Notes: generated from the sequence alone by a model not told the origin. 64,000 nucleotides of DNA from Macrostomum lignano (GCA_002269645.1 NIVC01003413.1:1-64000); one strand, 5' to 3'; counted from the stretch's first letter, positions 21,501 to 63,983 are shown. Numbers and translations: made by a program.

Positions 21501-23006
21501 TCAAACTTTTCTGACTGCCAATCAGAAATGGAACGCCAAGTGGTGCGTGAATGATGTCATAGTCCGAGGTACTGGTTGCATTTACTGTCGATAGGAGCAT
21601 TTGAGCTGCAAAATGCATCCGGGATTGAGACAACTGGAGTGACTTCAGCCAAGTTATAATAACTGCAGCAGACTGTTGACACGTCAGTCAAAGTTTCATG
21701 CCCACAAACACTGACCCGAACTCAGTATGTGCTAGCCTAGCGCACATTAACTATGTGCTAGTTTATTTCTGTCTTATTGTTAAATGCTTTCTTTTTTAAC
21801 GAAAAAATATTTTTAGTGCCCACACAAATGGTTTTGCCACTATTGGAAGTTAAGATATGCATTAACCGTACCAAGCACTGACAATAAAAGTTTGACCTCT
21901 CGTTGCATCGTCAGATACAAATTCATCCGATTGGGACAGCATTCGCAGGCATCTCAGTCGAAGAGAATTTTTGTATCTGGGACATGGCCACAAGTGAATT
22001 AAATAAAAAGCTACTCAATCAAACGACATGTAGGAATAATGCATGCACTGCAGAGACTACTGACGAAATTGAGTTCGGTAGTGGATTTTCGCGCTGTTGC
22101 GAGCTGCAAGTTTTTTAATTAGCTTCTATGGCCACATAGGTGGTTAATGAGTGGCCCATCTGGTGTTTATACATGTATGATCTTTGGTACAAGCTTCAGC
22201 CATTCAGAACTTAAAAGGGACTACACCTTTTCACGTTCAATTTTGATCAAAGTCCAGTTCTAAAAAAACTAGCGGAAATTCAATTCAGACTGGGGATAAT
22301 TTTGTCTATGGCTAAACCTTGTTGCTTCGGTAGCAGAATGTTTTGAACTGGGGTTTGTTGCCCCAGTCTAAATTGAATTTCCGCAAGTTTTTTAGAACTG
22401 GACTTTGATCAAAATTGGACGTGAAAAGGTGTATTATTAAATTCAGACAGCCAATGAAATTCATGGGCTTCTAGATATATCCGGGGGAATATAAGCTGTA
22501 TATATCGGAGGGAATATCCCAATTTTTAGAAAGTCTTGGCCATAGACTCGCTTTAAGATGAGCGATCTTTTCTATTCCTTCATCCATGGTTCTACCTTGT
22601 AGTCAGTGAGTCTCTCTGTGATAAAAACCAATCCAAAAACCAAAGATGTCACATCAACTCACGATAGCAGACAGTCCCGTTGCCATAGTAACCCGGCTTG
22701 CAGATGCAATCAAATGAGCCGATCAGGTTGATGCAGTCGGCATTGGCATCGCACTTGGAGCTGCTGAGACACTCGTCAACGTCTTTATAATTTAGTTCAG
22801 TTTATGGCCAATAAAATACAGGCATAAATGTAGCTACAAGTATTCGCATTTTTAACAAGTGACCGAAATCAGAGGCTTTCACTTACCGGTGCAATTATCA
22901 GTTCCGTTGCCTTGAAACCCATCAAAGCAGGTGCAGTTGTACGACCCCGGCGTGTCGGTGCAAGTTGCGTAGAGACCGCAGGGCTTCGAATCGCATTTCT
23001 TCACGT
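18594..23006 (-). CDS. Module E (incomplete in window: ends after the VWD exon), 7 exons, 2,399 nt
   Basis: Exons: 22887-23006; 22663-22782; 21493-21605; 20903-21316; 19748-20426; 19443-19658; 18594-19330. The donor GTGAGC is intact at 18588-18593, and intron homology stops at about 18548. Confidence 0.8.
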
Positions 23007-26000
23007 CTGTAATGGTAGCAGCAGACACGCGTACGGAAATTATAACAAAATAAAGGAAAACAAGTAATCTATAGAATCTACAAAAAATTCCATCAGACCC
23101 ACACGAACACATATATTTTTTAATGTATATGGAAATGCTGTATGCTAGAATGTCTATAGATGCGATATCTACTGGTGTGGTAAATATATTTTCAGCTGCT
23201 GCCTTGACAGGCCCCGCCTTGAGGCAGATTTCAGCTAAGAGCTGTAAATTATATGTATGCTGTGTGTTATCCATAACATGGTGTCAGAGATGCAGTTAGA
23301 ACAGAACATGGTTCGTGTCAGACTGCTGCTGTTAGCAAATTTTACACGTAGTTGCACGGAGACAACAGCGAGGTGATGTTTGATTCGACTGGATTGCGAC
23401 CTCCAGGTCCCATGGTTTTCGACGACCTTTCACTCACTTTCATACAGTGAGAGCACATGGGCATACCATACTGAAGAGTGCTAAGACCTATCGTGAATGT
23501 GATTCAAGAAAGAGTGTTACATTCGAAGAGAAGCTGCATATCAATACTCATTTGGGTTCGCACATCCCTAGTAATGACATGCGACAGCCCTATATGACGC
23601 TCAGACGATTCATGGTCGTGTTGTTAAGCGTTAAACCGTGTTTTTGTTGTTGTTATCTGCTGCCTGAGCTGTGAGTACAACTGCATTCTCAAACTGTTGA
23701 GTATTTTACTATATGGAAAGGGGATGTTGCATGTATATGAATATGCTTTATGGAGAAGATACAGACGTAGCATAGAGTTGAGGGTGTAGTTCGGTCCTAG
23801 GAGTTTACGAAAAATACACTCTGCAAATCCAAATATACTAAATATTTGCTAAATTTCTCTTAAATTCCTGTGTTTGTGGCGATAAAATTACAACCAACAA
23901 ATTTATGCATAAAAAAGATAGGGGGATTTCTGAGGTGTAAGTACTTACCAACCGATAATCAGCTAAAGACAAAAATAATTTAGAATATAAATATTGGGGG
24001 TGTGAGAGTGAAGATCCCAACATTCTTCACCATATACCAGTTTTATCAAGGACAAAATCACTGCTCCATTCATTACTTCCTTCGTTTTATGTAGGGTAGG
24101 CCAAGTCAGAGCACAGGGTTTTACCTTCTGCCCCACACGGAACCTACGGAGAAGCAATGGTATGCAAATCGATCAATTGGCAAGAACAAATTGTCTGTCG
24201 CTGACATGTGCTCTGAAGTTGGAGTCCGCGCATTGGAGTCCGCATGTACAAACGGACCTCGGACATTCAAATCGGCAACTCATCGGCTTTTCTGGACTCC
24301 AAACTGCTACGCAATGTGAAAAAAAGACTCAGCAGACGAGTACGGTAGGCGTTAACTAAATTTTAACTTCCATAGCTGCTTTTTCATTATTAACAATTCA
24401 TTTTAGGTACGCCACATCGTGACTCCCTTATATTGTGACTGGAAAAAACTAAAGTGTTGTTGACTATGCATTGCCCTCGAATTCGTGTTTCTTCTTCATG
24501 CGTTTTTGGCTTTGAAAGTTTGTATCCTTTAAAAGAACATCGTGGGGATTTAACCTAGGATGCCTATGCGATGTCTATCGTAAATATACCTTTTCAAGCC
24601 CGAATGTGACAAAAGAAATCGAATGGCTATCTATCTGACCCAGACGAAAAAAGCATGCCGTACACAAGAATCTTAGAGACTGACCAATGAAGGCTCGTAA
24701 ACAGCTACAGAATTTTGCGACTTAAGAACTTACGGTTAAGCCGTTAAGACTAAGCGAATATAGCGGTGCCACATTTCGCTTACTTTACCACTTTTGGTTT
24801 TTGTATTTTGAAAGTACCACCTTCATGGAAGAAAGAATAGAATGGAGTGCTAATCTGAGCCAGTTATTTTTATCTCGTTCAATTTTCGCTTCTAACATCC
24901 CCTTCCCCCCGTTCTTTCCTATTGGCTCGTGACTGCCATAGACAAAGTATTTTTCGTCTCGTTTTTGTTTTCGTTCCCCTCTAAAAGGTATTTCCCAGCA
25001 TCGTACGAGCTCACAGCAAAATATGCTTTCAGCCAATAGGAAGGAACGGGGAAGGGATGTTAAAAGCGAAAATCGAGCGAGACAAAAATAACTGGCTCAG
25101 ATTAGCACTCCATTTTATTCCTCCCTCGATGACCACCTTACACAACTATTTTTAGATCTCTAAGCTCATATCCAAGCCATAGAAAAATTTGAAATTTGAA
25201 TTTGAAATTACTTTCGTCAAATTCGCGCCTGAAAAATATATACTGATAGCTAACGCCTTAAAGAGCCCCGAATTGTGAAAGAGATAAGCCAAGAGCTGCT
25301 AAATCTTTAACCCTGAGTAATAACTATAACGCAAACAAACATGAGACACTTAAGACACACACACACATCAGACCTACTAATAAGAATAATACGAGCTAAT
25401 AACTGATTACACCTGTCCAATGGGCAGATGTGCAACCGACAGCTCAGCCGCAGCTATTGCGCGACGCATCTGAAGGCTGCGCACGGCTGTTCAGTCCAAT
25501 GACTGGGGGGTCGCCACACCCACCCTCAATCACCCCAGCTAATTCTGGCACCCATTTTACAGCTAAGTGAACTGTAGCAATCCAGAGTTAAGCGTCTTGC
25601 TTAAGGACACAAATTGTTGCAGTGGGATCAGGAATCGAACATCCGACCTTCAAGTCGTGAATCCGACGCTCTAACCACTAGGCTACAACCCCTTTTGGCT
25701 ACAACCGCTTTTAGTAGGTGAGACCTACAAAAAACAAGTACACAAATGAGATCTAAGAGAACCCACATACAACCGAAAATAACACACGCATCAGACCCAC
25801 AAAAACACATACATAGGACACACAAGAACACAAATCAAACCCACAAGAAAACGAATCAGGCACACAAGAACACGAGAAAAATATATGAAAAATACTTTCA
25901 GGCTGCTGAACCTCACACAATTAAATACTTTACAGAACAGCTGCTCACCTTGCGGCTCCTGGCAGTCAGATGTCAGACAGGTTTTCACTGCCTGCTCGCA

Positions 26001-32000: not shown

Positions 32001-35000
32001 TTTCCCCACTTACAGCATTTGCCTTGGCTCGAGAACACAGGCCCAGGCAGAGGTCGAGCCAGCCGTTTTTCTTGTCCCAAGCTTGCCAGGAAGTACAGTT
32101 CGAGACGCAGTCGAATCGGTTCCCATAAGGCAGTGACGGCGTCAGAATGCGCCAAGTCACGATGAGCGCCGTGAGAGGGTTGAACTTGGACCGAATCTCC
32201 TGCTCGATGATCTGCTTGACCGCGCGCCAGTTCGAGCTAGAGCTATGGTTCCTCGAATTCAGCAGCTCGAAGGAAACCTTCGGAGTCCAATATCTCCGGT
32301 AGTAGTTGGTGGCAGGCTTAACGAACCAGTAAGGCGCCACGACGGCTCCAGTAAAGTTGATTTTGGCCGAGGTGGAGTTGTATGGTAAATGCCTCAGGCG
32401 ATAACCAGAGAAACTGATTGCTCCGTATTGGCTAACCTAGGGTGTTGAGAGTATTTTTTCACATTAGGTACATAGAAAAAGATAAAAACACATCAAAGAA
32501 GTTGATTAAAGCTGCGAATTCCCGCCAGCTCAGTAGAAAAAATGTCAACTCGAAGTTACAGTTCAACTCTGTATGCAAAGTAAGATGTTGCGAAGCAGGA
32601 CTCACTCGACAAGACAAGCTTTCCTGACTGCCAATCAGAAAAGGAATTCCATGTGGTGCATCAACGGTGCGACGGTACCAGATACGGGTGTACGAGCTCA
32701 TTCGGGTGTACCGGATACGGGTTGCATTTACTGTCGATAAGAGCATTTGAGCTGAAAAATGCATCCGAGTTTGAGAAAACTTGAGTGACTTCAGCCAAAT
32801 TTAATTATAAATATATCACGTCAACTCACGATAGCAGACAGTCCCGTTGCCATAGTAACCCGGCTTGCAAATGCAATCAAATGAGCCAATCAGGTTGATG
32901 CAGTCGGCATGAGCATCGCATTTGGAGCTGCTGAGACACTCGTCAACGTCTGTAATTGGGTTCAGTTGATGGCCGATCAAATACAAGCACAAGTTTAGTT
33001 ATAATAAGCCGAATTTATTAAAAGTTAGTAAAGTCGAAGGTTTTCACTTACCGGTGCAATTATCAGTTCCGTTTCCTTGAAACCCATCGAAGCAGGTGCA
33101 GTTGTACGACCCCGGCGTGTCGGTGCAGGTAGCGTACAGACCGCAAGGCTTCGAATCGCATTTGCTCACGTCTGCAATGGTAGCATCAGCCGGATAAAGA
33201 AATAAAGAAAAACGGGTGATCAATGGAATCAACAAAACATCACATCAACCTCACACTAGCACACACATCAGATCCACAACAACACACACACGTCAAAAAA
33301 AACAAGAATACACACATGAGACCAGTAAGAACACACATCTGATGCACAAAAACACACAAAAATCCTACCAGAATACACACATTAGAGCCAGTAGAAAACA
33401 CAAACACAAATTATAAAAAAACAACCATCAAGCACACGATAACACGAGTAGAAAGTCTACGACAATAAATTTCAGATTGTGTGAATCTACTGTAATCGGG
33501 TAATCTACTGCGCAACTGCTCACCTTGCGGCTCCTGGCAGTCAGATGTCAGACAGACTTTCACTGCCTGCTCGCATTGGGGTCCTGTAAATCCTAGATCG
33601 CACTTGCACTCTTCACGGTGATAGTAAGCTGCAATGGTGACGAGTGGGTGAGTGAGTGAGCGAATGAGTCAGTCAGTCAGTCAGTCAGTCAGTCAGTCAG
33701 TCAGTCAGTCAGTCAGTCAGTCAGTCAGTCGGTCAGTCAGTCAGTCAGTCAGTCAGTCAGTCAGTCAGTCAGTCAGTCAGTCAATCAGTCAGTCAGTCAG
33801 TCAGTCAGTCAGTCAGTCAGCTACTCACCCGTGTCGTCAGTCAGTCAGTCAGTCAGTCAGTCACACTCACTCAAGTCAGTCAGTCAGCTACTCACCCGTG
33901 TCGTCAGCCATGCCGCAGTCAGGGCAGCAGCGGCCCCTGCTCCCGCAGTCGCACACCACAATCCTGGGAGTCCACACCGTGACGGCTCCGACCTCGTCCA
34001 CGGCCGCCAGCTGCAGTTTGATGTCGTCTCGCCAGTTGTCGACGGGCTGCCACACGAGTTGCCAGCTGCCGCTGGCCCCAGCCTCCAGCTTCGCGGTCCC
34101 CCCGACGGCCTCCAGCACGGTGACATTCGGTGAGGCGCCGTCGGGATCCGTCACGGAGAAGGTGACACTGACACTGTTGTTGCCGCTCACTCGCAGCTGG
34201 CTCGGGGCGCTCACGAACTGCGGTGGTCGGTTGGCCAGGACGACCCGGGTTCGAGTCTCGTCTCGAATAGCGACGGCCGCGTCTTGAGCGGCTGCGACCG
34301 AGCGAAGCTGAGCGGCGTCGAACATGCAGGTGAGGTAGGAGGAGCCGGAGCTGCGGCACACCTGCCAAAGCGGGGAGAAAGCAGCGACGGTCCATGGACG
34401 GTTTTTGGAATGCTTAATAAGTATTTACTAGCAATTTCATAATTTAAAAAATACGGTAGTAAAGCGCTGGCAACAACTTTTGAAATAAAGAAGTGGGTCG
34501 AAAATTGTTCCCGACCGATGCAACCTTTTCATTTAATCAGGAATTCATTGGAGCCATGTCACGACAAACTACGAGCTAGATTTCAGCGTGATTTTACCGC
34601 TACAGGTCGGATTTTATTTGGCTACAAAAAGAATCTTGACCATTTTTTTGACGAACCTTTCCGGAACCTATGAAGAACATTCTCAGGTTAGCCAACCCCA
34701 CTGATCCACATCAGGTCACCTGCACCGTAGAAATTATTGCTTCATCCTGAATACTGCTCATCTGGCACATCTTAATTTCCACCTGTCCTTTCTACTCACC
34801 TTTTCCGAAGTGTTCTTGAGCTCTGCGTTCCCGCCGAACAGCGCCAGCATGTTGTCCTTGAAGTCCTCGGCAAAGGTCGGCACGAAGCTGAGATTGCAGA
34901 AGTCAGCTCGGCCCTTGCCAGCCGGGTAGTGCAGGTAGCTCGGCTCTGAGCTGTTGAGTCTCCAGCTGTTCCCGAACTCAAACAGCTGCCTCTCGGAGCT

Positions 35001-38000: not shown

Positions 38001-41000
38001 CATAAAGAGATAAAAACACATCAAAGAAGTTGATTAAAGCTGCGAATTCCCGCCAGCTCAGTAGAAAAAATGTCAACTCGAAGTTACAGTTAAACTCTGT
38101 ATGCAAAGTAAGATGTTGCGAAGCAGGACTCACTCGACAAGACAAGCTTTCCTGACTGCCAATCAGAAATGGAATGCTTTGTGTTGCGTTAACAGTGTGA
38201 TTTAGCCGGATACGGGTGTACCAGCTGATTCGGTAGTACCGGATACGGGTTGCATTTACTGTCGATAGGAGCATTTGAGCTGAAAAATGCATCCGGGATT
38301 GAGAAAACTCGAGTGACTTTAGCCAAATATAATTACAAATATATCACGTCAACTCACGATAACAGACAGTCCCGTTGCCATAGTAACCCGGCTTGCAAAT
38401 GCAATCAAATGAGCCAATCAGGTTGATGCAGTCGGCATGAGCACTGCATTTGGAGCTACTGAGACACTCGTCAACGTCTTTAATTGGGTTCAGTTGATTG
38501 CCGATCAAATACAAGCACAAGTTTAGTTATAATAAGCCGAATTTATTAAAAGTTAGTAAAGTCGAAAGTTTTCACTTACCGGTGCAATTATCAGTTCCGT
38601 TGCCTTGAAACCCATCGAAGCAGGTGCAGTTGTACGACCCCGGCGTGTCGGTGCAAGTTGCGTAGAGACCGCAGGGCTTCGAATCGCATTTTCTCACGTC
38701 TGCAATGGTAGCATCAGCCGGATAAAGAAATAAAAAAAAACGGGTGATCAATGGAATCTACAGAGCATGCTGTAGTCGGCTTGTTAGTGCTCGTGCACTG
38801 CTGAGGGGATTGTTTGTTATCGCGTGCACATTGGGGTGAGCGTACCCACCACACCGTTTTAGTTGAAACTCAAAATATAATGGGATGCGCAGTGAGGATG
38901 GACTCACATTTTTTTGGTTACTCAGTCTCAAGACCACGCTCTTACACTTGTGGCAGCGATTTCAAAATGGCCAAACAAGAAAAAAATAGTTTACTGCCTC
39001 CAAAATTTAGAGGCAATTGCAATGTTAGAATGTCTCTTAGCACTTTTAATGACCTCGCCGATGACTGCGAATGGGACGATAAGAAGACGGCAAGGAAGCT
39101 GAAACTGCTGTTGACAGGCGAAGCGCATAATCTTCGTCTGGGAGCAGCCGGCGGATGTGGCAGCCAGCTACGAGCAGCTGAAGCAAAAGTTTATCGAGTG
39201 CTTCGGCAACAGCCTGAGCTGCTACAAGGCAATAGAGGAGTTGAAGAGCGAAAGCGGCAGCCAAACTCGCCTACAACCTCGCCTACTCGCCTGAGGGAGC
39301 TCGCCTACAACCTGAAGCTTCTCCACCTTCGAGCTCGCCCGAACGACTCCGTAGGAGCTTGAAAAAAAGGATGTTCAGTTTCGCCTGATGCGCTTACCCC
39401 CATCGGCCGTGAGAGATGCGCTGCTAAAGGACAAGGACTCTGCCTCGTACTCGCTGGCATCGTCGACCGAGCTGCGCGACTTGAGCTGGAATCTGGCAAG
39501 ATAGGCCACGCGACTCCGGTTGAAGCAGCTGCCGTGGCAGTCAGAGGATAAGCCCGCTCGAGCAGCAGATGCAGCAGCTGACAGCCAGTATCCAAGGAGG
39601 CTCATCCCATATTAACAGGCGTCAAGGTTGGCATCAAGTGCCACAGCTGCTGCAAGCCAGGTCACATCGCCAGGTGGTGCCCGAAGGCTATCAGCTGTCG
39701 TTGCAGCCGGTGCTCAGGCAAGGGCCACACTGCAGCGGTGTGCCCGACTCCAGCTGGCAAGCCGCAGGGAAACTTCTGAGGGTCGGCAGCCTTGAGTCAA
39801 CACCGACCCGCTCTAATGGGGCCCTTGGCGTCGCGCCCTCGGTCCTCGCGAAGGTGCGTCTCGGCAGTTTGTCAGCGCCGGCTCTGCTAGACACTGGCGC
39901 TCAAGTTTCTTTGAAGGATAAGTCCTTGTTCGACAGACTGGCCCGCCAAATCGACTCCACTAGTGTTGATGCCTTGCCGACAGCGGTTGAAGGTTCGAGG
40001 CTGCCCTGCTTCGGCCTTTCGGCAGTGGAAGTAGCAATCGGCAAGATCATCCCACTGCGTCATCGCTTCACTATAGTGGACGGCACCCAGCCTAGCCTGA
40101 TCATCGGCATGGATCTCATCGACCAGATGTCAGAGGCGATGACCGTTGGCTTGAAAGAGGGTATCGTCAAGTTCGATGACACCACGGTGGCTCGGGAGGC
40201 GTAAACCACGGAGCTGCCCTCACGCAGCGAGAAGCTGGTGCGGCTTAAGGTGGATTCCACTGGCGAGCAAGGGCCATTCGAGCCGTCTGACAACTTCGTC
40301 AAGTCGACCGCCACCCTGCCTGCTCGCGTGCTGGTGGTCTCGGACGAGTGTCGCATACCGGTTAAAATGTACATCATCGTCTTCAGTAGGACCCTCGACA
40401 AGCATCTGGTGAGACTGGAGCGCGTTTTTCAACAGCTGCGAGATGCGGGTCTCAAACTGCACAAGGCCAACAGCGTTTCCGGCCATCGCTGGGTGCTGTA
40501 CCTGGAACACCTGATCAGCTAGCAGGGTATTGCACCGGACCCCAGCAAGGTTGAGGTCATTCACATCATGCCTAGTCCAAAGTCCGTCGAAGAGGTGAAG
40601 CGGTACTTAAGCATGCTAGGATTCTACCGCCGTTTCATCGAAAGATTCATCCAGAAGGCGAGAGTCCTGCACGAGGTAGGTGTGAAATCGAGAGACTTCG
40701 CGTGAACCAGCGACTGCGAGCGAGCTTTCAAAGAGCTTAAGGACCAGCTGACGAATGCTCCGGTTCTGAGACAAAGCAGTTTTTGTTACTCACACACTTT
40801 TTTGGTGACTCAGTTTTAAGACAACGCTCCGAACCACATAAAAACATCAGAACTACAAAATAACACACATCGGACCCACAAGAAAACACACATCAATTCC
40901 AAAAGAAAACACAACAGGTGTTAGCAGACACAGAAGAACACGAGTGAAAAGTTTACAAAAAAATCAGGTTTTTGAAACACCTGAAATCCGTTAATTTACT

Positions 41001-50000: not shown

Positions 50001-52646
50001 TGCCTCTAATAAAAAAGAACTAAGATATTTTCTTGGTCATTGCCAGCAAACGGAAGTGCAAATTATTTCCGTGGGAATGAGCTCTGTCACTTCGGAGAGA
50101 TTTCCCCACTCACAGCATTTGCCTTGTCTCGAGAACACAGGCCCAGGCAGAGGTCGAGCCAGCCGTTTTTCTCGTCCCAAGCTTGCCTAGAAGTGCAGTT
50201 CGAGACGCAGTCGAATCGGTTCCCATAAGGCAGTGACGGCGTCAGAATGCGCCAAGTCACGATGAGCGCCGTCAGAGGGTTGAACTTGGACCGAATCTCC
50301 TGCTCTATGATCTGCTTGACCGCGCGCCAGTTCGAGCTAGAGCTATGGTTCCTCGAATTCAGCAGCTCGAAGGAAACCTTCGGAGTCCAATATCTCCGGT
50401 AGTAGTTGGTGGCAGGCTTAACGAACCAGTAAGGCGCCACGACGGCTCCAGTAAAGTTGATCTTCGCCGAGGTGGAGTTGTATGGTAAATGCCTCAGGCG
50501 ATAACCAGAGAAACTGATTGCTCCGTATTGGCTAACCTAGGGTGTTAAGATTTTTTTATTTAAAGCACACAGAAAAAGTTAAAGGACAATTAAAAAGTTG
50601 ATTTGAGCGAAATCTCCATCAGCTCAGTAGAAATAACTGTCAATTCGAAGTTACAGTTCAACTTTGTACGCAAAGCCAGATGTTGCAGAGCAGGACTCAC
50701 TCGAAAAGACAAACTTTCCTGACTGCCAATCAGAAAAGGAGCACCACGTGGTGCGGAAATGGAGCGTCTGTCGCCGTACCAGATACGGGTGTACGAACTC
50801 ATTCGGTAGTACCGGATACGGGTTGCATTTACTGTCGATAGGATCATGTGAGCTGAAAAATGCATCCGGGATTGAGAAAACTCGAGTGACTTTAGCCAAA
50901 TATAAATACAAATATATCACGTCAACTCACGATAACAGACAGTCCCGTTGCCATAGTAACCCGGCTTGCAAATGCAATCAAATGAACCGATCAGGTTGAT
51001 GCAGTCGGCATGAGCATCGCATTTGGAGCTGCTGAGACACTCGTCAACGTCTTTAATTGGGTTCAGTTTATGGCCGTTCAAATACAAGCTCAAGTTTAGT
51101 TATAAGTAGCCGCATTTATTTAAAAGTTAGTAAAATAGAAGGTAGAGTAGCTCGCTTAATAAATAGGAATAAAATGAATGAGAGAACAAACATTAACTCG
51201 TTTTTTTACTTTAATTCAATTGCCAATGCATTTCGACCCTCGTAGGTCATCGTCAGGGCAGTAGTGAAATTGAAAATTCTAATAAACAGTTGAATAAATA
51301 TACCTGTGATAAGTTGAATACACAATATAAATTATTGTACGTAGTTTTCAATCGAAACAAGTTAACACACGGTGCAGTAGCGTACACTCAAAGCTAAAAC
51401 ACGCTGAGTATGTCCCAGTATGTCTGCAACTTGAAGTCTCGTGTCCCTCGGCCTCTCAATGCAGGTGTCGTTTATAAATTTCATTGCTCTGGCGACCAGA
51501 GTATTTCGTACATCGGAAAAACTAAGCCACACTTGTACACTAGGGTCAAGGAGCACTGGACCAAAAGATCTGCTGTACAGGAGCATCTTCTCACATGCAA
51601 CTCATGCTGTAACAACAAACCGATTGATTTATTTAAGATTATCGATTCTTGCCGCCATGAGCACACTTTGAATATCTTAGAGGCTATGTACATCAAAGAT
51701 CAGAACCCGAGCCTAAACTGCCAGCTAGCTATGGGGGGGTGCCAGCCGCCAACTCAGCGTGTTTTAGCTTGGAGTGTACGCTACTGCACCGTGTGTTAAC
51801 TTGTTTCGATTGAAAACTACGTAATAATTTATATTGTGTATTCAACTTATCACAGGTATATTTATTCAACTGTTTATTAGAATTTTCAATTTCACTACTG
51901 CCCTGACGATAACCTACAAGGGTCGAAATGCATTGGCAATTGAATAAAAGTAAAAAAACGAGTTAATGTTTGTTCTCTAATTAAAGTCGAAGGTTTTCAC
52001 TTACCGGTGCAATTATCTGTTCCGTTGCCTTGAAACCCATCGATGCAGGTGCAGTTGTACGACCCCGGCGTGTCGGTGCAGGTAGCGTACAGACCGCAAG
52101 GCTTCGAATCGCATTTGCTCACGTCTGCAATGGTAGGTCGTTACAGCAGATACGGATAACGAAATAAAGGAAAACGGGTGATCAATGGAATCAACAAAAC
52201 ATCACATCAACCTCACACTAGCACACACATCAGATCCACAACAAAACACATACACATCGGAAAAACAAGAATACACACATAAGACCCGCAAGCTCAAAAC
52301 ACAGATTAAAATGCAACCACCAGAAACAATAACACGAGAGGAAAGTTTACGGCAATAAATTTCAGATTGTGTGAATCTACTGCAATCCGGTAATCTACTG
52401 CGCAACTGCTCACCTTGCGGCTCCTGGCAGTCAGATATCAGACAGACATTCACTGACTGCTCGCATTGGGGTCCTGTAAATCCCAGATCGCACTTGCACT
52501 CTTCACGGTGATAGTAAGCTGCAATGGTGACGAGTGGGTGCGTGAGTGAGTGAGTGAGTGAGTGAGTGAGTGAGTGAGTGAGTAAGTGAGTGAGTGAGTG
52601 AGTCAGTCAGTCAGTCAGTCAGTCACCCACTCACTCCAGTCAGTCA

Positions 52647-62580: not shown

Positions 62581-63983
62581 ATGCCAAATAAATGCGCCGT
62601 TTTTTTTGCAAGTTCGACAGCGAGTTGGCAACGGCACGGTCAGCGAGGATTTCATTCCACAAGTTTCCGAATCGAGACGACCTACTGGAAAAATGGTTAA
62701 AGAGCATTTCCCGAAAAGCAAATTTCAAACCATCGAAGCACATTCGAAGTTGCTCTCTTCTCTTCACGGAATCAGATTTTATTACGGAGAATCAGGACAA
62801 CAATGCATATCGGAAAAAGAAACAACACGAAGAAGGTGCCAATCTTGAAAAAAATTAAGAGAAGATGCAGTTCCCACCCACTACAGCACGACCAGCATGC
62901 CATCATATTTTACAAAAACTCCGCCAGCTTCGCGATCAGGAAACGCATCGTCGCAACGGCGTCACGAGATTGAAATCGCACAGGTGGAACAACAAGAGAG
63001 ATTATTTCGCCAGTGAAAGAATTCACTCACTTGAATATTTTGTCGCTAAGTTTTCGAAAGAGAAGAAGCCGTGTGGATTTGCTGCGCGTCAATCAGCAAA
63101 CAATCTCAGCATTATGCTTATAGCCAATGGTCTACCTCCCTTGATCAAGAGTTGCATAGTCGTGAATTGTATGTTGGAAGTCCTAGTTTTTTATGGCAGT
63201 CGGGCAGCATCGCCAAAACAGTACAGCCACATCATTCCAGCGTCCTAAACTCTGAGTTCAGCCACGCAGCTTGTAAATTTAATGGCCATTGTGAAGTCTT
63301 CAACTGAATCCAATACATTCCACGTTGACCACAAAGAGAGGCTGCTCTAGATAATCTCAAACAGTTGCTCCAGCAGGACAATTGTCCGTCGGACGGCAGT
63401 GCGCCGTCTTGCCTGGCTTTTATTTCTAATCTGGCGGCCGAGATTCGTGAAGAAGTTTATCTTAACTGTCTACCGGACAAAAGTGACATGGCCACAGTTT
63501 ACTATGTTAGTGGTTTCTTTGCGAGCTCATCAGTTAGGAAGAAGAAGTGGGAATCATGCAAACAGACTCTGGTGTGCGAAAATTCGATTGTGGACTTTGA
63601 ATTTGAAGAGACATCTCAAATGAAAGAATCGTCGGACCTTCTTCGTGAAATCGATCGAGGTGGTCTCTTCTGGTCGCAGGAGAATCTGTTTCAGTTGGGC
63701 ATTATGTGCTGGCGTGTCTTCACAGAAGTCAAGAACACACCCAACCTAAAAAGACAAACTTCTGTCAGCTTCCAATCAAAGGGAGACATTTTGTTTCGTG
63801 ATGGACCTCCTGCTGACAGATCATGGTGACTTTCTATTTGGTAAGACACACTGCACCGCTGGCCATGATCTGGTCCGCGAGATCATCAACAAGTTTTTCA
63901 ATTGCATGTCAAAGATGCTAACAAAGCAGATCAATAAAGATGAGACAAACAAAACATTGAAGAGGAAGCTTACAGATAGATAA
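62581..63983 (+). mobile_element. Decayed THAP-domain (P-element/THAP9-like) transposase, apparently lacking the catalytic core
   Basis: MPNKCAVF, a frameshift in a T-run, then CKFD...SFHKFPNRDDLLEKWLKSISRKANFKPSKHIRSCSLLFTESDF (THAP, zinc His lost). C-terminal YYVSGFFA...IDRGGL...IINKFFN segment typical of this family. Confidence 0.75.

What the first reader, a model, noticed from the sequence alone, without database searches (positions are those of the whole stretch)
51133..51982. Penelope-like insertion places a hammerhead ribozyme on each strand, the intact one on the gene's own pre-mRNA strand
Seen: inverted ~228-bp pLTRs each contain UGCC-CUGACGA-U-stemII-GAAA-UGCAUU-GGCA. The minus-strand copy (51221-51260), which is sense for the host gene, has a perfect GACC/GGUC stem II; the plus-strand copy has AACC. 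Stem III is the palindrome AUGCAU. Established: PLE pLTRs carry minimal type I hammerheads with palindromic stem III that are thought to work as dimers. Inference: the pre-mRNA intron between EGF1 and EGF2 of module B could self-cleave, or fold into a ~230-bp dsRNA hairpin (editing or siRNA substrate), affecting transcripts at the A/B boundary.
Basis: partly seen in the sequence, partly recalled or inferred. Interest (0 to 1): 0.7.

Follow-up and report, generated by a model that had tools for sequence, protein, structure and literature searches.

The report
Dead Penelope retrotransposon fragment in intron
A broken, head-to-head copy of a Penelope-like retrotransposon landed in a short intron of an EGF-repeat gene, bringing one relic mini-hammerhead ribozyme motif on each strand; this is the usual footprint of such elements and the ribozyme is very unlikely to cut the host transcript.

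Summary
An 838-bp insert (51144-51981) sits in a minus-strand intron between two EGF exons. Four paralogous introns in the same window are empty (103 nt). The insert is two 5'-truncated copies of a canonical Penelope-like element (PLE) joined head to head. One is a 233-bp 3' fragment plus a 33-nt tail on the minus strand. The other is a 572-bp copy on the plus strand holding the C-terminal GIY-YIG endonuclease and the 3'UTR. A 13-bp target duplication flanks them.

Each copy carries a minimal type I hammerhead with the published PLE hallmarks. The minus-strand copy (51221-51260) is intact. The plus-strand copy has lost the G10.1-C11.1 pair.

Related PLE loci show the same hammerhead position after the ORF, and three of four show the same inverted layout, which the literature also describes.

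The functional inference is weak. Each transcript would hold one hammerhead, while this ribozyme type needs a dimer. In the host RNA its exact complement is transcribed first. The predicted fold buries it in a ~230-bp duplex. An intronic dsRNA hairpin is the only plausible RNA-level consequence, and it is untested. Verdict: ordinary, a new instance of a known kind.

The parts
51131..51143 (.). Left copy of the target-site duplication (TAAAATAGAAGGT)
   Evidence: Both flanks align to the same 13 bp (TAAAGTCGAAGGT) of empty paralogous sites near 33043, 38571 and 58604. 11 of 13 identical to the right copy.
51144..51176 (-). 33-nt 'tail' extension, present only at this end of the insert
   Evidence: Not part of the inverted repeat and absent from the empty sites. 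Matches the optional 30-40-bp PLE tail (PMC8557442, PMC11167929).
51177..51409 (-). Inverted, strongly 5'-truncated PLE copy: the last 233 nt of the element (end of ORF plus 3'UTR)
   Evidence: 97% identical to the reverse complement of 51752-51982.
51221..51260 (-). Intact minimal type I hammerhead motif, sense to the host gene. The predicted cleavage site is after U at 51225.
   Evidence: Only hit of the strict descriptor, 0 of 300 shuffles. Custom CM gives 42.3 bits, E about 7e-10.
51410..51981 (+). Direct 5'-truncated PLE copy (C-terminal endonuclease domain plus 3'UTR)
51410..51767 (+). GIY-YIG endonuclease coding remnant. It is frameshifted by an extra G in the run 51733-51739. The native stop is TAG at 51765-51767.
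   Evidence: Pfam GIY-YIG E=1.1e-5. 1342 homologues, matching the C-terminus of 600-880-aa RT-containing proteins. 84% identical to P0001, which carries RT plus EN. The frameshift is seen against L020.
51899..51938 (+). Degenerate hammerhead motif in the PLE sense orientation: A10.1 opposite C11.1, and loop 2 ACAA
   Evidence: Fails the descriptor. Custom CM gives 33.3 bits.
51982..51994 (.). Right copy of the target-site duplication (TAAAGTCGAAGGT)
51051..52004 (-). Host intron: 954 nt, or 103 nt without the insert and duplication. It lies between two EGF exons.
   Evidence: GT...AG boundaries, in-frame junction, EGF_CA and EGF_3 Pfam hits on both exons. Paralogous introns are empty.

Best explanation
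This is a dead, non-autonomous remnant of a single integration of a canonical endonuclease-positive Penelope-like element (RT plus C-terminal GIY-YIG) into a ~103-nt intron of a minus-strand NIDO/EGF-repeat gene.

How it formed (inferred from the anatomy and the published biochemistry): the PLE enzyme nicked both target strands 13 bp apart. Reverse transcription was primed from both nicks on the 3' end of the element RNA. One cDNA started at the distal start site and so kept the 33-nt tail, stopping after 233 nt. The other started at the proximal site and ran 572 nt into the endonuclease domain. The two were joined head to head.

Each copy therefore carries the element's 3'UTR hammerhead, which puts one motif on each genomic strand. 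The motifs are relics of the element's own biology. The plus copy has since lost G10.1, and the ORF has acquired a frameshift.

In the host pre-mRNA the two arms most likely zip into a ~230-bp hairpin. That loops the insert out, buries the single hammerhead and leaves splicing of the intron essentially as before. Self-cleavage is expected to be negligible.

Shown: the structure, the homology, the empty sites and the thermodynamics. Inferred: the integration pathway and the lack of cleavage.
For: - Empty paralogous sites and a 13-bp duplication delimit an 838-bp insert.
- The GIY-YIG ORF matches the C-termini of long RT-bearing proteins. The 84%-identical relative P0001 has RT plus EN contiguous.
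- The inverted arms are 97% identical, with a one-sided 33-nt tail. This is the arrangement described for PLEs (PMC8557442). It is explained by cleavage and extension of both strands and two RT start sites (PMC11167929).
- Related PLE loci L021-L024 each have a min-hammerhead 96-190 nt after the ORF stop, against 131 nt here. Three of them have the same inverted layout with 100% identical arms.
- Hammerhead hallmarks are met: a bulged nucleotide after A9, G10.1-C11.1 and a palindromic helix III (PMC4209133).
- The intron MFE pairs every hammerhead nucleotide with the other arm. Energies are -79 kcal/mol for the duplex against -9 to -12 for the ribozyme fold. The dimer gains about 2 kcal/mol.
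- Published data: monomers inactive and dimers weak (PMC4209133); no RNA-seq ends at a PLE hammerhead site and no need for it in insertion (PMC11167929).
Against: - No expression, RNA-end or small-RNA data are available, so inactivity is inferred, not shown.
- The duplication has 2 mismatches in 13, more than the ~2% arm divergence predicts.
- No copy of the same family with an intact 3'UTR was found (L020 ends 63 nt after the stop). The ancestral hammerhead sequence is therefore inferred from class-wide conservation of G10.1, not from a direct outgroup.
- In vivo chaperones could raise the activity of minimal hammerheads, as PMC4209133 suggests.
Confidence: 0.87

Rival explanations
1. The intact minus-strand hammerhead self-cleaves the host pre-mRNA, in cis as a monomer or in trans as a dimer of two nascent transcripts. 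This would lower or modulate output from this module of the gene.
For: The motif is complete and sits on the sense strand. Sense-strand intronic hammerheads exist in amniote genes (PMC6155905). Host factors might boost minimal hammerheads (PMC4209133).
Against: - There is one copy per transcript. Monomers of this class were inactive and dimers weak (PMC4209133).
- The dimer gains only about 2 kcal/mol.
- The complement is transcribed first and the duplex is about 70 kcal/mol more stable.
- The insert is absent from four paralogous introns.
- There is no Rfam hammerhead hit, so nothing resembles the monomer-active canonical types.
Confidence: 0.04
2. The insert matters as a long intronic dsRNA hairpin. 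The ~230-bp stem would be a substrate for Dicer (endo-siRNAs) or ADAR editing, with possible silencing of other copies of the same PLE family or effects on the host transcript.
For: The near-perfect 233-bp stem is the predicted MFE of the intron, at -491.5 kcal/mol. Both arms are in one transcription unit.
Against: No small-RNA or editing data are available. Splicing and intron turnover may outpace processing. There is no sign of conservation, since the paralogues lack the insert. Any effect would be a generic consequence of an inverted-repeat insertion, not of the hammerhead.
Confidence: 0.2
3. It is not a Penelope-like element but a foldback or MITE-type DNA transposon with long terminal inverted repeats, and the hammerhead-like strings are chance.
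For: Long terminal inverted repeats and a short duplication superficially resemble a DNA transposon.
Against: - The ORF between the arms is homologous to the C-terminal EN of RT-EN polyproteins.
- One arm simply continues that ORF's 3'UTR.
- The one-sided tail is asymmetric.
- The descriptor hit nothing in 300 shuffles.
- The hammerhead is in the same position in related RT-encoding loci.
Confidence: 0.01

Closest known systems
Minimal hammerhead ribozymes of metazoan Penelope-like elements (Cervera & de la Pena 2014, PMC4209133; Lunse, Weinberg & Breaker 2017, cited from PMC6765202, not read here)
   Same: - Type I topology, with a 4-bp helix I.
- An unpaired nucleotide between A9 and G10.1.
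- A G10.1-C11.1 pair.
- A 1-bp helix III with a 4-nt loop, which together form the palindrome AUGCAU for dimer formation.
- Location in the terminal repeat / 3'UTR of a PLE.
- Pairs of motifs on opposite strands 100-700 bp apart were already reported.
   Different: Nothing architectural. Helix II is 5 bp here, against 6-8 bp in the schistosome and D. virilis examples. The plus-strand copy has lost G10.1.
Canonical EN+ PLE insertions with an inverted 5'-truncated copy and a 30-40-bp tail (Craig et al. 2021, PMC8557442; Mob DNA 2024, PMC11167929)
   Same: [quoted passage not shown]
   Different: This copy retains no RT and no direct pseudo-LTR, so it cannot be transcribed as a tandem or transpose.
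Conserved intronic hammerheads of amniotes (RECK, CTCL, DTNB; reviewed in PMC6155905)
   Same: A hammerhead on the sense strand of an intron of a protein-coding gene.
   Different: Those are canonical hammerheads with loop-loop tertiary contacts, active as monomers and conserved across species. This one is a minimal dimer-type motif, lineage-specific, absent from paralogous introns, and masked by its own complement.
Hairpin-RNA (inverted-repeat) endo-siRNA or editing substrates made by inverted transposon copies (general knowledge, not tested here)
   Same: A >200-bp near-perfect intramolecular duplex within one transcription unit.
   Different: No evidence of processing. The loop is 342 nt and the structure is intronic.

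Membership tests
Penelope-like element (canonical EN+ clade) | Derives from an element encoding RT fused to a C-terminal GIY-YIG endonuclease | tested here: met
   Pfam GIY-YIG E=1.1e-5. phmmer gives 1342 hits, aligned to the C-terminal ~105 aa of 600-880-aa proteins with RVT_1. P0001 is 84% identical and has RT plus EN in one ORF.
Penelope-like element (canonical EN+ clade) | RT domain present in this copy (autonomous, full-length element) | tested here: not met
   The insert is only 838 bp and the ORF starts within the EN domain. It is a 5'-truncated fragment, which is itself typical of PLE insertions (PMC8557442). It is filed as a PLE fragment, not as an active PLE.
Penelope-like element (canonical EN+ clade) | Terminal repeats formed by partial tandem or inverted copies, with an optional one-sided 30-40-bp tail | tested here: met
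   233-nt inverted arms plus a 33-nt one-sided extension. The same layout occurs in related loci L021, L022 and L024.
Penelope-like element (canonical EN+ clade) | Target-site duplication of variable length | tested here: met
   13 bp, 11 of 13 identical, with both copies aligning to the empty paralogous sites. The two mismatches are unexplained.
PLE-type minimal hammerhead | Catalytic core C3-U-G-A-N-G8-A9 ... G12-A-A14 ... U16.1-H17 | tested here: met
   Both copies have CUGACGA ... GAA ... UU.
PLE-type minimal hammerhead | Extra unpaired nucleotide between A9 and G10.1 | tested here: met
   A U in both copies.
PLE-type minimal hammerhead | G10.1-C11.1 base pair | tested here: met
   Met in the minus-strand copy (G at 51248). 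Not met in the plus-strand copy (A at 51911). The pair is invariant in 18 of 18 comparison motifs.
PLE-type minimal hammerhead | Palindromic 15.2-16.2 / loop 3 that allows an intermolecular helix III | tested here: met
   AUGCAU here. Relatives have AUAUAU and ACCGGU.
PLE-type minimal hammerhead | Helices I and II supported by covariation across the class | tested here: met
   In 18 independent motifs, 91.9% of cells are paired against 69.5% in shuffles, and 7 of 10 pairs have double changes. Caveat: 16 of the 18 were fished with a pattern derived from this motif's core.
PLE-type minimal hammerhead | Mg2+-dependent self-cleavage after H17 (as a dimer) | not testable with these tools
   Only thermodynamics was available: double-hammerhead -23.9 kcal/mol against 2 x -11.0 for monomers.
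Rfam hammerhead families (types I, II, III, HH9, HH10) | Match to a curated covariance model | tested here: not met
   No hit at the gathering threshold or at E<=10, even on a 91-nt slice. This is expected, because those models require a real helix III and longer helices. A custom CM built from min-HHRs scores 42.3 and 33.3 bits.
Domesticated intronic hammerheads | Conservation of the motif at the same intron across gene copies or species | tested here: not met
   Four paralogous introns in the window are empty. Orthologues could not be examined.

The most novel reading that the evidence does not exclude
A recently inserted, antisense-oriented PLE fragment could give a host gene a conditionally active sense-strand ribozyme. 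Under this reading the hairpin normally masks the hammerhead, but helicases, ADAR editing of the stem or antisense transcription unmask it, so that pre-mRNA from this one module of a tandem EGF array is cleaved or turned into siRNAs. That would be an early step toward the kind of domestication seen for amniote intronic hammerheads.
Probability: 0.03. Interest if true: 0.6.

Novelty: new member of a known kind. Interest (0 to 1): 0.15.

Why it matters
Mostly as annotation. It explains why this intron is 954 nt while its paralogues are 103 nt. It dates the insertion after the module duplications. It flags a long inverted repeat that can disturb assembly and could form intronic dsRNA.

It is also a clean textbook example, with internal empty-site controls, of the two-strand priming model for Penelope-like elements: a 13-bp stagger, one arm with the tail and one without.

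It does not open a new question about ribozymes. Minimal hammerheads on opposite strands of truncated PLEs, and their weak dimer-dependent activity, are already described.

Tried and rejected
- Rfam scans of the whole window, of the 1.1-kb region and of a 91-nt slice found no hammerhead family. I take this as a limit of the models, not as absence of the motif.
- My first fixed-spacing pattern had one N too many and found nothing.
- Word-indexed protein searches with the 129-aa ORF and with a NIDO exon found nothing. The exact-sequence lookup of the ORF also found nothing. The source organism therefore remains unidentified.
- A family-specific hammerhead pattern including helix I found nothing in metagenome or viral contigs.
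- The closest relative's contig (L020) ends 63 nt after the stop and then runs into a CT microsatellite. It gives no outgroup for the hammerhead.
- Two of the 19 metagenome pattern hits (L002, L013) are bacterial coding sequence with an unpaired 'helix II', so they were discarded as chance.
- MAFFT misaligned L023, so it was dropped from the model alignment.
- My first dimer energy evaluation used a crossing, invalid topology. It was redone with the proper double-hammerhead pairing.
- Lunse et al. 2017 is not held in the library.
- The foldback DNA transposon and chance-motif readings were considered and rejected (see rival explanations).

Full report
**1. What is in the sequence**

The region holds a 233-nt inverted repeat, arms 51177-51409 and 51752-51982. 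The arms differ by five substitutions and one 2-bp indel.

On the minus strand, 51260->51221 reads UGCC CUGACGA U GACCU ACGA GGGUC GAA AUGCAU U GGCA. The plus strand, 51899-51938, is the same except for two G->A changes, at 51911 (position 10.1) and 51918 (loop 2, a CpG->CpA change).

I wrote a strict minimal-hammerhead descriptor: helix I of at least 4 bp, CUGANGA, 0-1 bulged nucleotide, helix II of at least 4 bp opening with G-C, GAAA, a palindromic helix III, then UH. It hits the 64-kb window exactly once, at 51221-51260 on the minus strand. It hits none of 300 dinucleotide-preserving shuffles. The plus-strand copy fails it because A10.1 faces C11.1.

Rfam finds no hammerhead family at the gathering threshold or at E<=10. 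Those models do not represent hammerheads whose helix III is a single pair.

**2. Host context**

The flanking ORFs on the minus strand are EGF_CA/EGF_3 exons. With the GT donor at 52004-52003 and the AG acceptor at 51052-51051, they join in frame as ...GNGTDNCT|DVDECLSS....

The window is a tandem array of NIDO/EGF modules. Paralogous copies of this intron, at about 22878, 33043, 38571 and 58604, are all empty.

Comparison with the three closest paralogues gives the pre-insertion sequence AAAAGTTAGTAAAGTCGAAGGTTTTCACTTACC. It also shows that 13 bp are present on both sides of the insert: TAAAATAGAAGGT at 51131-51143 and TAAAGTCGAAGGT at 51982-51994.

The insert is therefore 51144-51981, or 838 bp. 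The intron is 954 nt here and 103 nt without the insert and duplication. The insertion postdates the module duplications.

**3. Identity of the insert**

The plus-strand ORF 51410-51799 has a GIY-YIG domain (Pfam E=1.1e-5).

An exhaustive phmmer search found 1342 homologues. The match falls at the extreme C-terminus of 600-880-aa proteins that carry an RT domain, for example P0004, P0015, P0057 and P0072. The best hit, P0001, is 84% identical and has RT motifs and the GIY-YIG domain in one ORF. This is the architecture of canonical EN+ Penelope-like elements.

Against the DNA of that relative (L020), the window copy has one extra G in the run 51733-51739. This shifts the frame. The native stop is TAG at 51765-51767.

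The plus copy therefore consists of the C-terminal EN domain plus a ~214-nt 3'UTR. The minus copy is the last 233 nt of the element plus 33 further nucleotides (51144-51176) that the plus copy lacks.

Craig et al. describe exactly this layout: 5' truncation, an inverted 5'-truncated copy abutting the main copy, and a 30-40-bp 'tail' at one end only (PMC8557442). The 2024 biochemical study adds two findings. A PLE protein cleaves and extends both target strands. Reverse transcription also starts at two adjacent internal sites, whose spacing corresponds to the tail (PMC11167929).

The window insert reads as a direct product of that mechanism. The nicks were 13 bp apart. One cDNA started at the distal start site and so carries the tail, and the other started at the proximal site. 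The two were joined at 51409/51410. This pathway is inferred from the anatomy, not observed.

**4. Related loci**

Four loci encoding relatives at about 45% amino-acid identity (L021-L024) each have a minimal hammerhead 96-190 nt downstream of the ORF stop. Here the distance is 131 nt.

Those motifs show:
- the U3-A8 core covariant reported by Cervera & de la Pena;
- the bulged nucleotide;
- the G10.1-C11.1 pair;
- palindromic helix III sequences AUAUAU or ACCGGU.

Three of these loci also have an upstream inverted copy. It gives 100% complementary arms of 185-469 nt and a hammerhead on each strand.

A pattern scan of metagenome contigs returned 19 loci, of which 17 fold as min-hammerheads. 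L005 is a tandem RT-encoding element. L004 has a weak GIY-YIG ORF. Two hits are chance matches in bacterial genes.

Across 18 such motifs, 91.9% of pair cells are standard pairs against 69.5% in shuffles, and 7 of 10 pairs show double changes. One caveat applies: 16 of these 18 were retrieved with a pattern based on this motif's core, so only the stems are independent evidence.

A covariance model built from them, without the window sequences, finds only two sites in the window. They are 51220-51261 minus (42.3 bits) and 51898-51939 plus (33.3 bits). The next best hit scores 9.6 bits.

**5. Would it work as a ribozyme in the host transcript?**

All four hallmarks listed by Cervera & de la Pena are present in the minus copy. 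[quoted passage not shown] The motif is a bona fide member of the class.

The same paper reports no detectable cleavage for single motifs and only low activity for dimers and trimers (PMC4209133). The 2024 study found no RNA-seq ends at a PLE hammerhead site and no requirement for the ribozyme in insertion (PMC11167929).

Here each strand's transcript carries a single hammerhead, so a cis dimer is impossible. The symmetric double-hammerhead of two molecules is only about 2 kcal/mol better than two separate monomers (-23.9 against 2 x -11.0).

In the host-sense RNA the antisense of the plus copy is transcribed about 640 nt before the hammerhead. The predicted MFE of the intron (-491.5 kcal/mol) pairs every hammerhead nucleotide with the other arm. 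The 40-nt motif with its complement scores -79 kcal/mol, against -9 to -12 for ribozyme-compatible folds. The helix can nucleate at the inner ends of the arms and zip up behind the polymerase, so kinetics do not rescue the ribozyme either. That kinetic argument is inference.

The fact that the intact copy lies on the gene's strand needs no selective explanation. Two of five substitutions fall in 40 of 233 nt, which has a binomial probability of about 0.2.

**6. What remains plausible**

If the gene is transcribed, a ~230-bp intronic hairpin is almost certain to be able to form. It may be trimmed, edited or diced. This is a generic property of inverted transposon copies and cannot be tested here.

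The hairpin would also bring the splice sites back to roughly their original spacing. The antisense arm contributes AAUAAA hexamers at 51878 and 51866. I treat their effect as speculative.

**7. Comparison and verdict**

This is a new instance of a well-described kind. Cervera & de la Pena already noted pairs of min-hammerheads 100-700 bp apart on opposite strands and attributed them to truncated PLEs.

It differs from the conserved intronic hammerheads of amniotes (PMC6155905) in several ways. It is minimal and dimer-type, lineage-specific, absent from paralogous introns, and masked by its complement.

The self-cleaving pre-mRNA inference is not supported. Interest is low.

The organism could not be identified.

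Noticed in passing
window 1-64000, minus strand; paralogous EGF introns near 22878, 33043, 38571, 51996 and 58604: The whole window is a tandem array of diverged NIDO/EGF exon modules (80-97% identical blocks) with variable spacing caused by insertions. It looks like one very large repetitive extracellular-protein gene or gene cluster.
   Followed up: partly
window 38740-40204 (+): Another mobile-element insertion lies in the neighbouring module. Its ORFs have a gag-like N-terminus and a retroviral-type aspartyl protease (Pfam Asp_protease_2 E=1e-5), so it is probably an LTR-retrotransposon fragment.
   Followed up: partly
window 25623-25692 (-): An Rfam tRNA hit lies just above gathering score (30.1 against 29 bits) with a defective T-arm. 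ARAGORN does not call it. It is likely a tRNA-derived SINE or a pseudogene.
   Followed up: partly
window 51131-51143 vs 51982-51994: The 13-bp target duplication differs at two positions (G->A and C->A in the left copy), although the 233-nt arms differ by only ~2%. Either repair at the left junction was error-prone, or the true duplication is shorter (TAAA) and the tail is 42 nt.
   Followed up: partly
window 51733-51739 (+): A run of seven G where the 84%-identical relative has six. This frameshifts the last ~11 codons of the endonuclease ORF, which then reads on into the inverted repeat.
   Followed up: yes
window 52524-52600: A (GAGT)n microsatellite lies in the next intron upstream on the host strand.
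   Followed up: no
L021, L022, L024 (ENA ERZ25070167) and L023 (ERZ25070786): Very young PLE insertions with 100% identical inverted arms. Their hammerheads use the U3-A8 core covariant and AUAUAU or ACCGGU helix III. This would be a good data set for studying PLE integration products.
   Followed up: partly
window 63508-63533 (-): A CUGAUGA...GAAA core-like string without supporting helices. It scores nothing with the custom model and is judged to be chance.
   Followed up: yes
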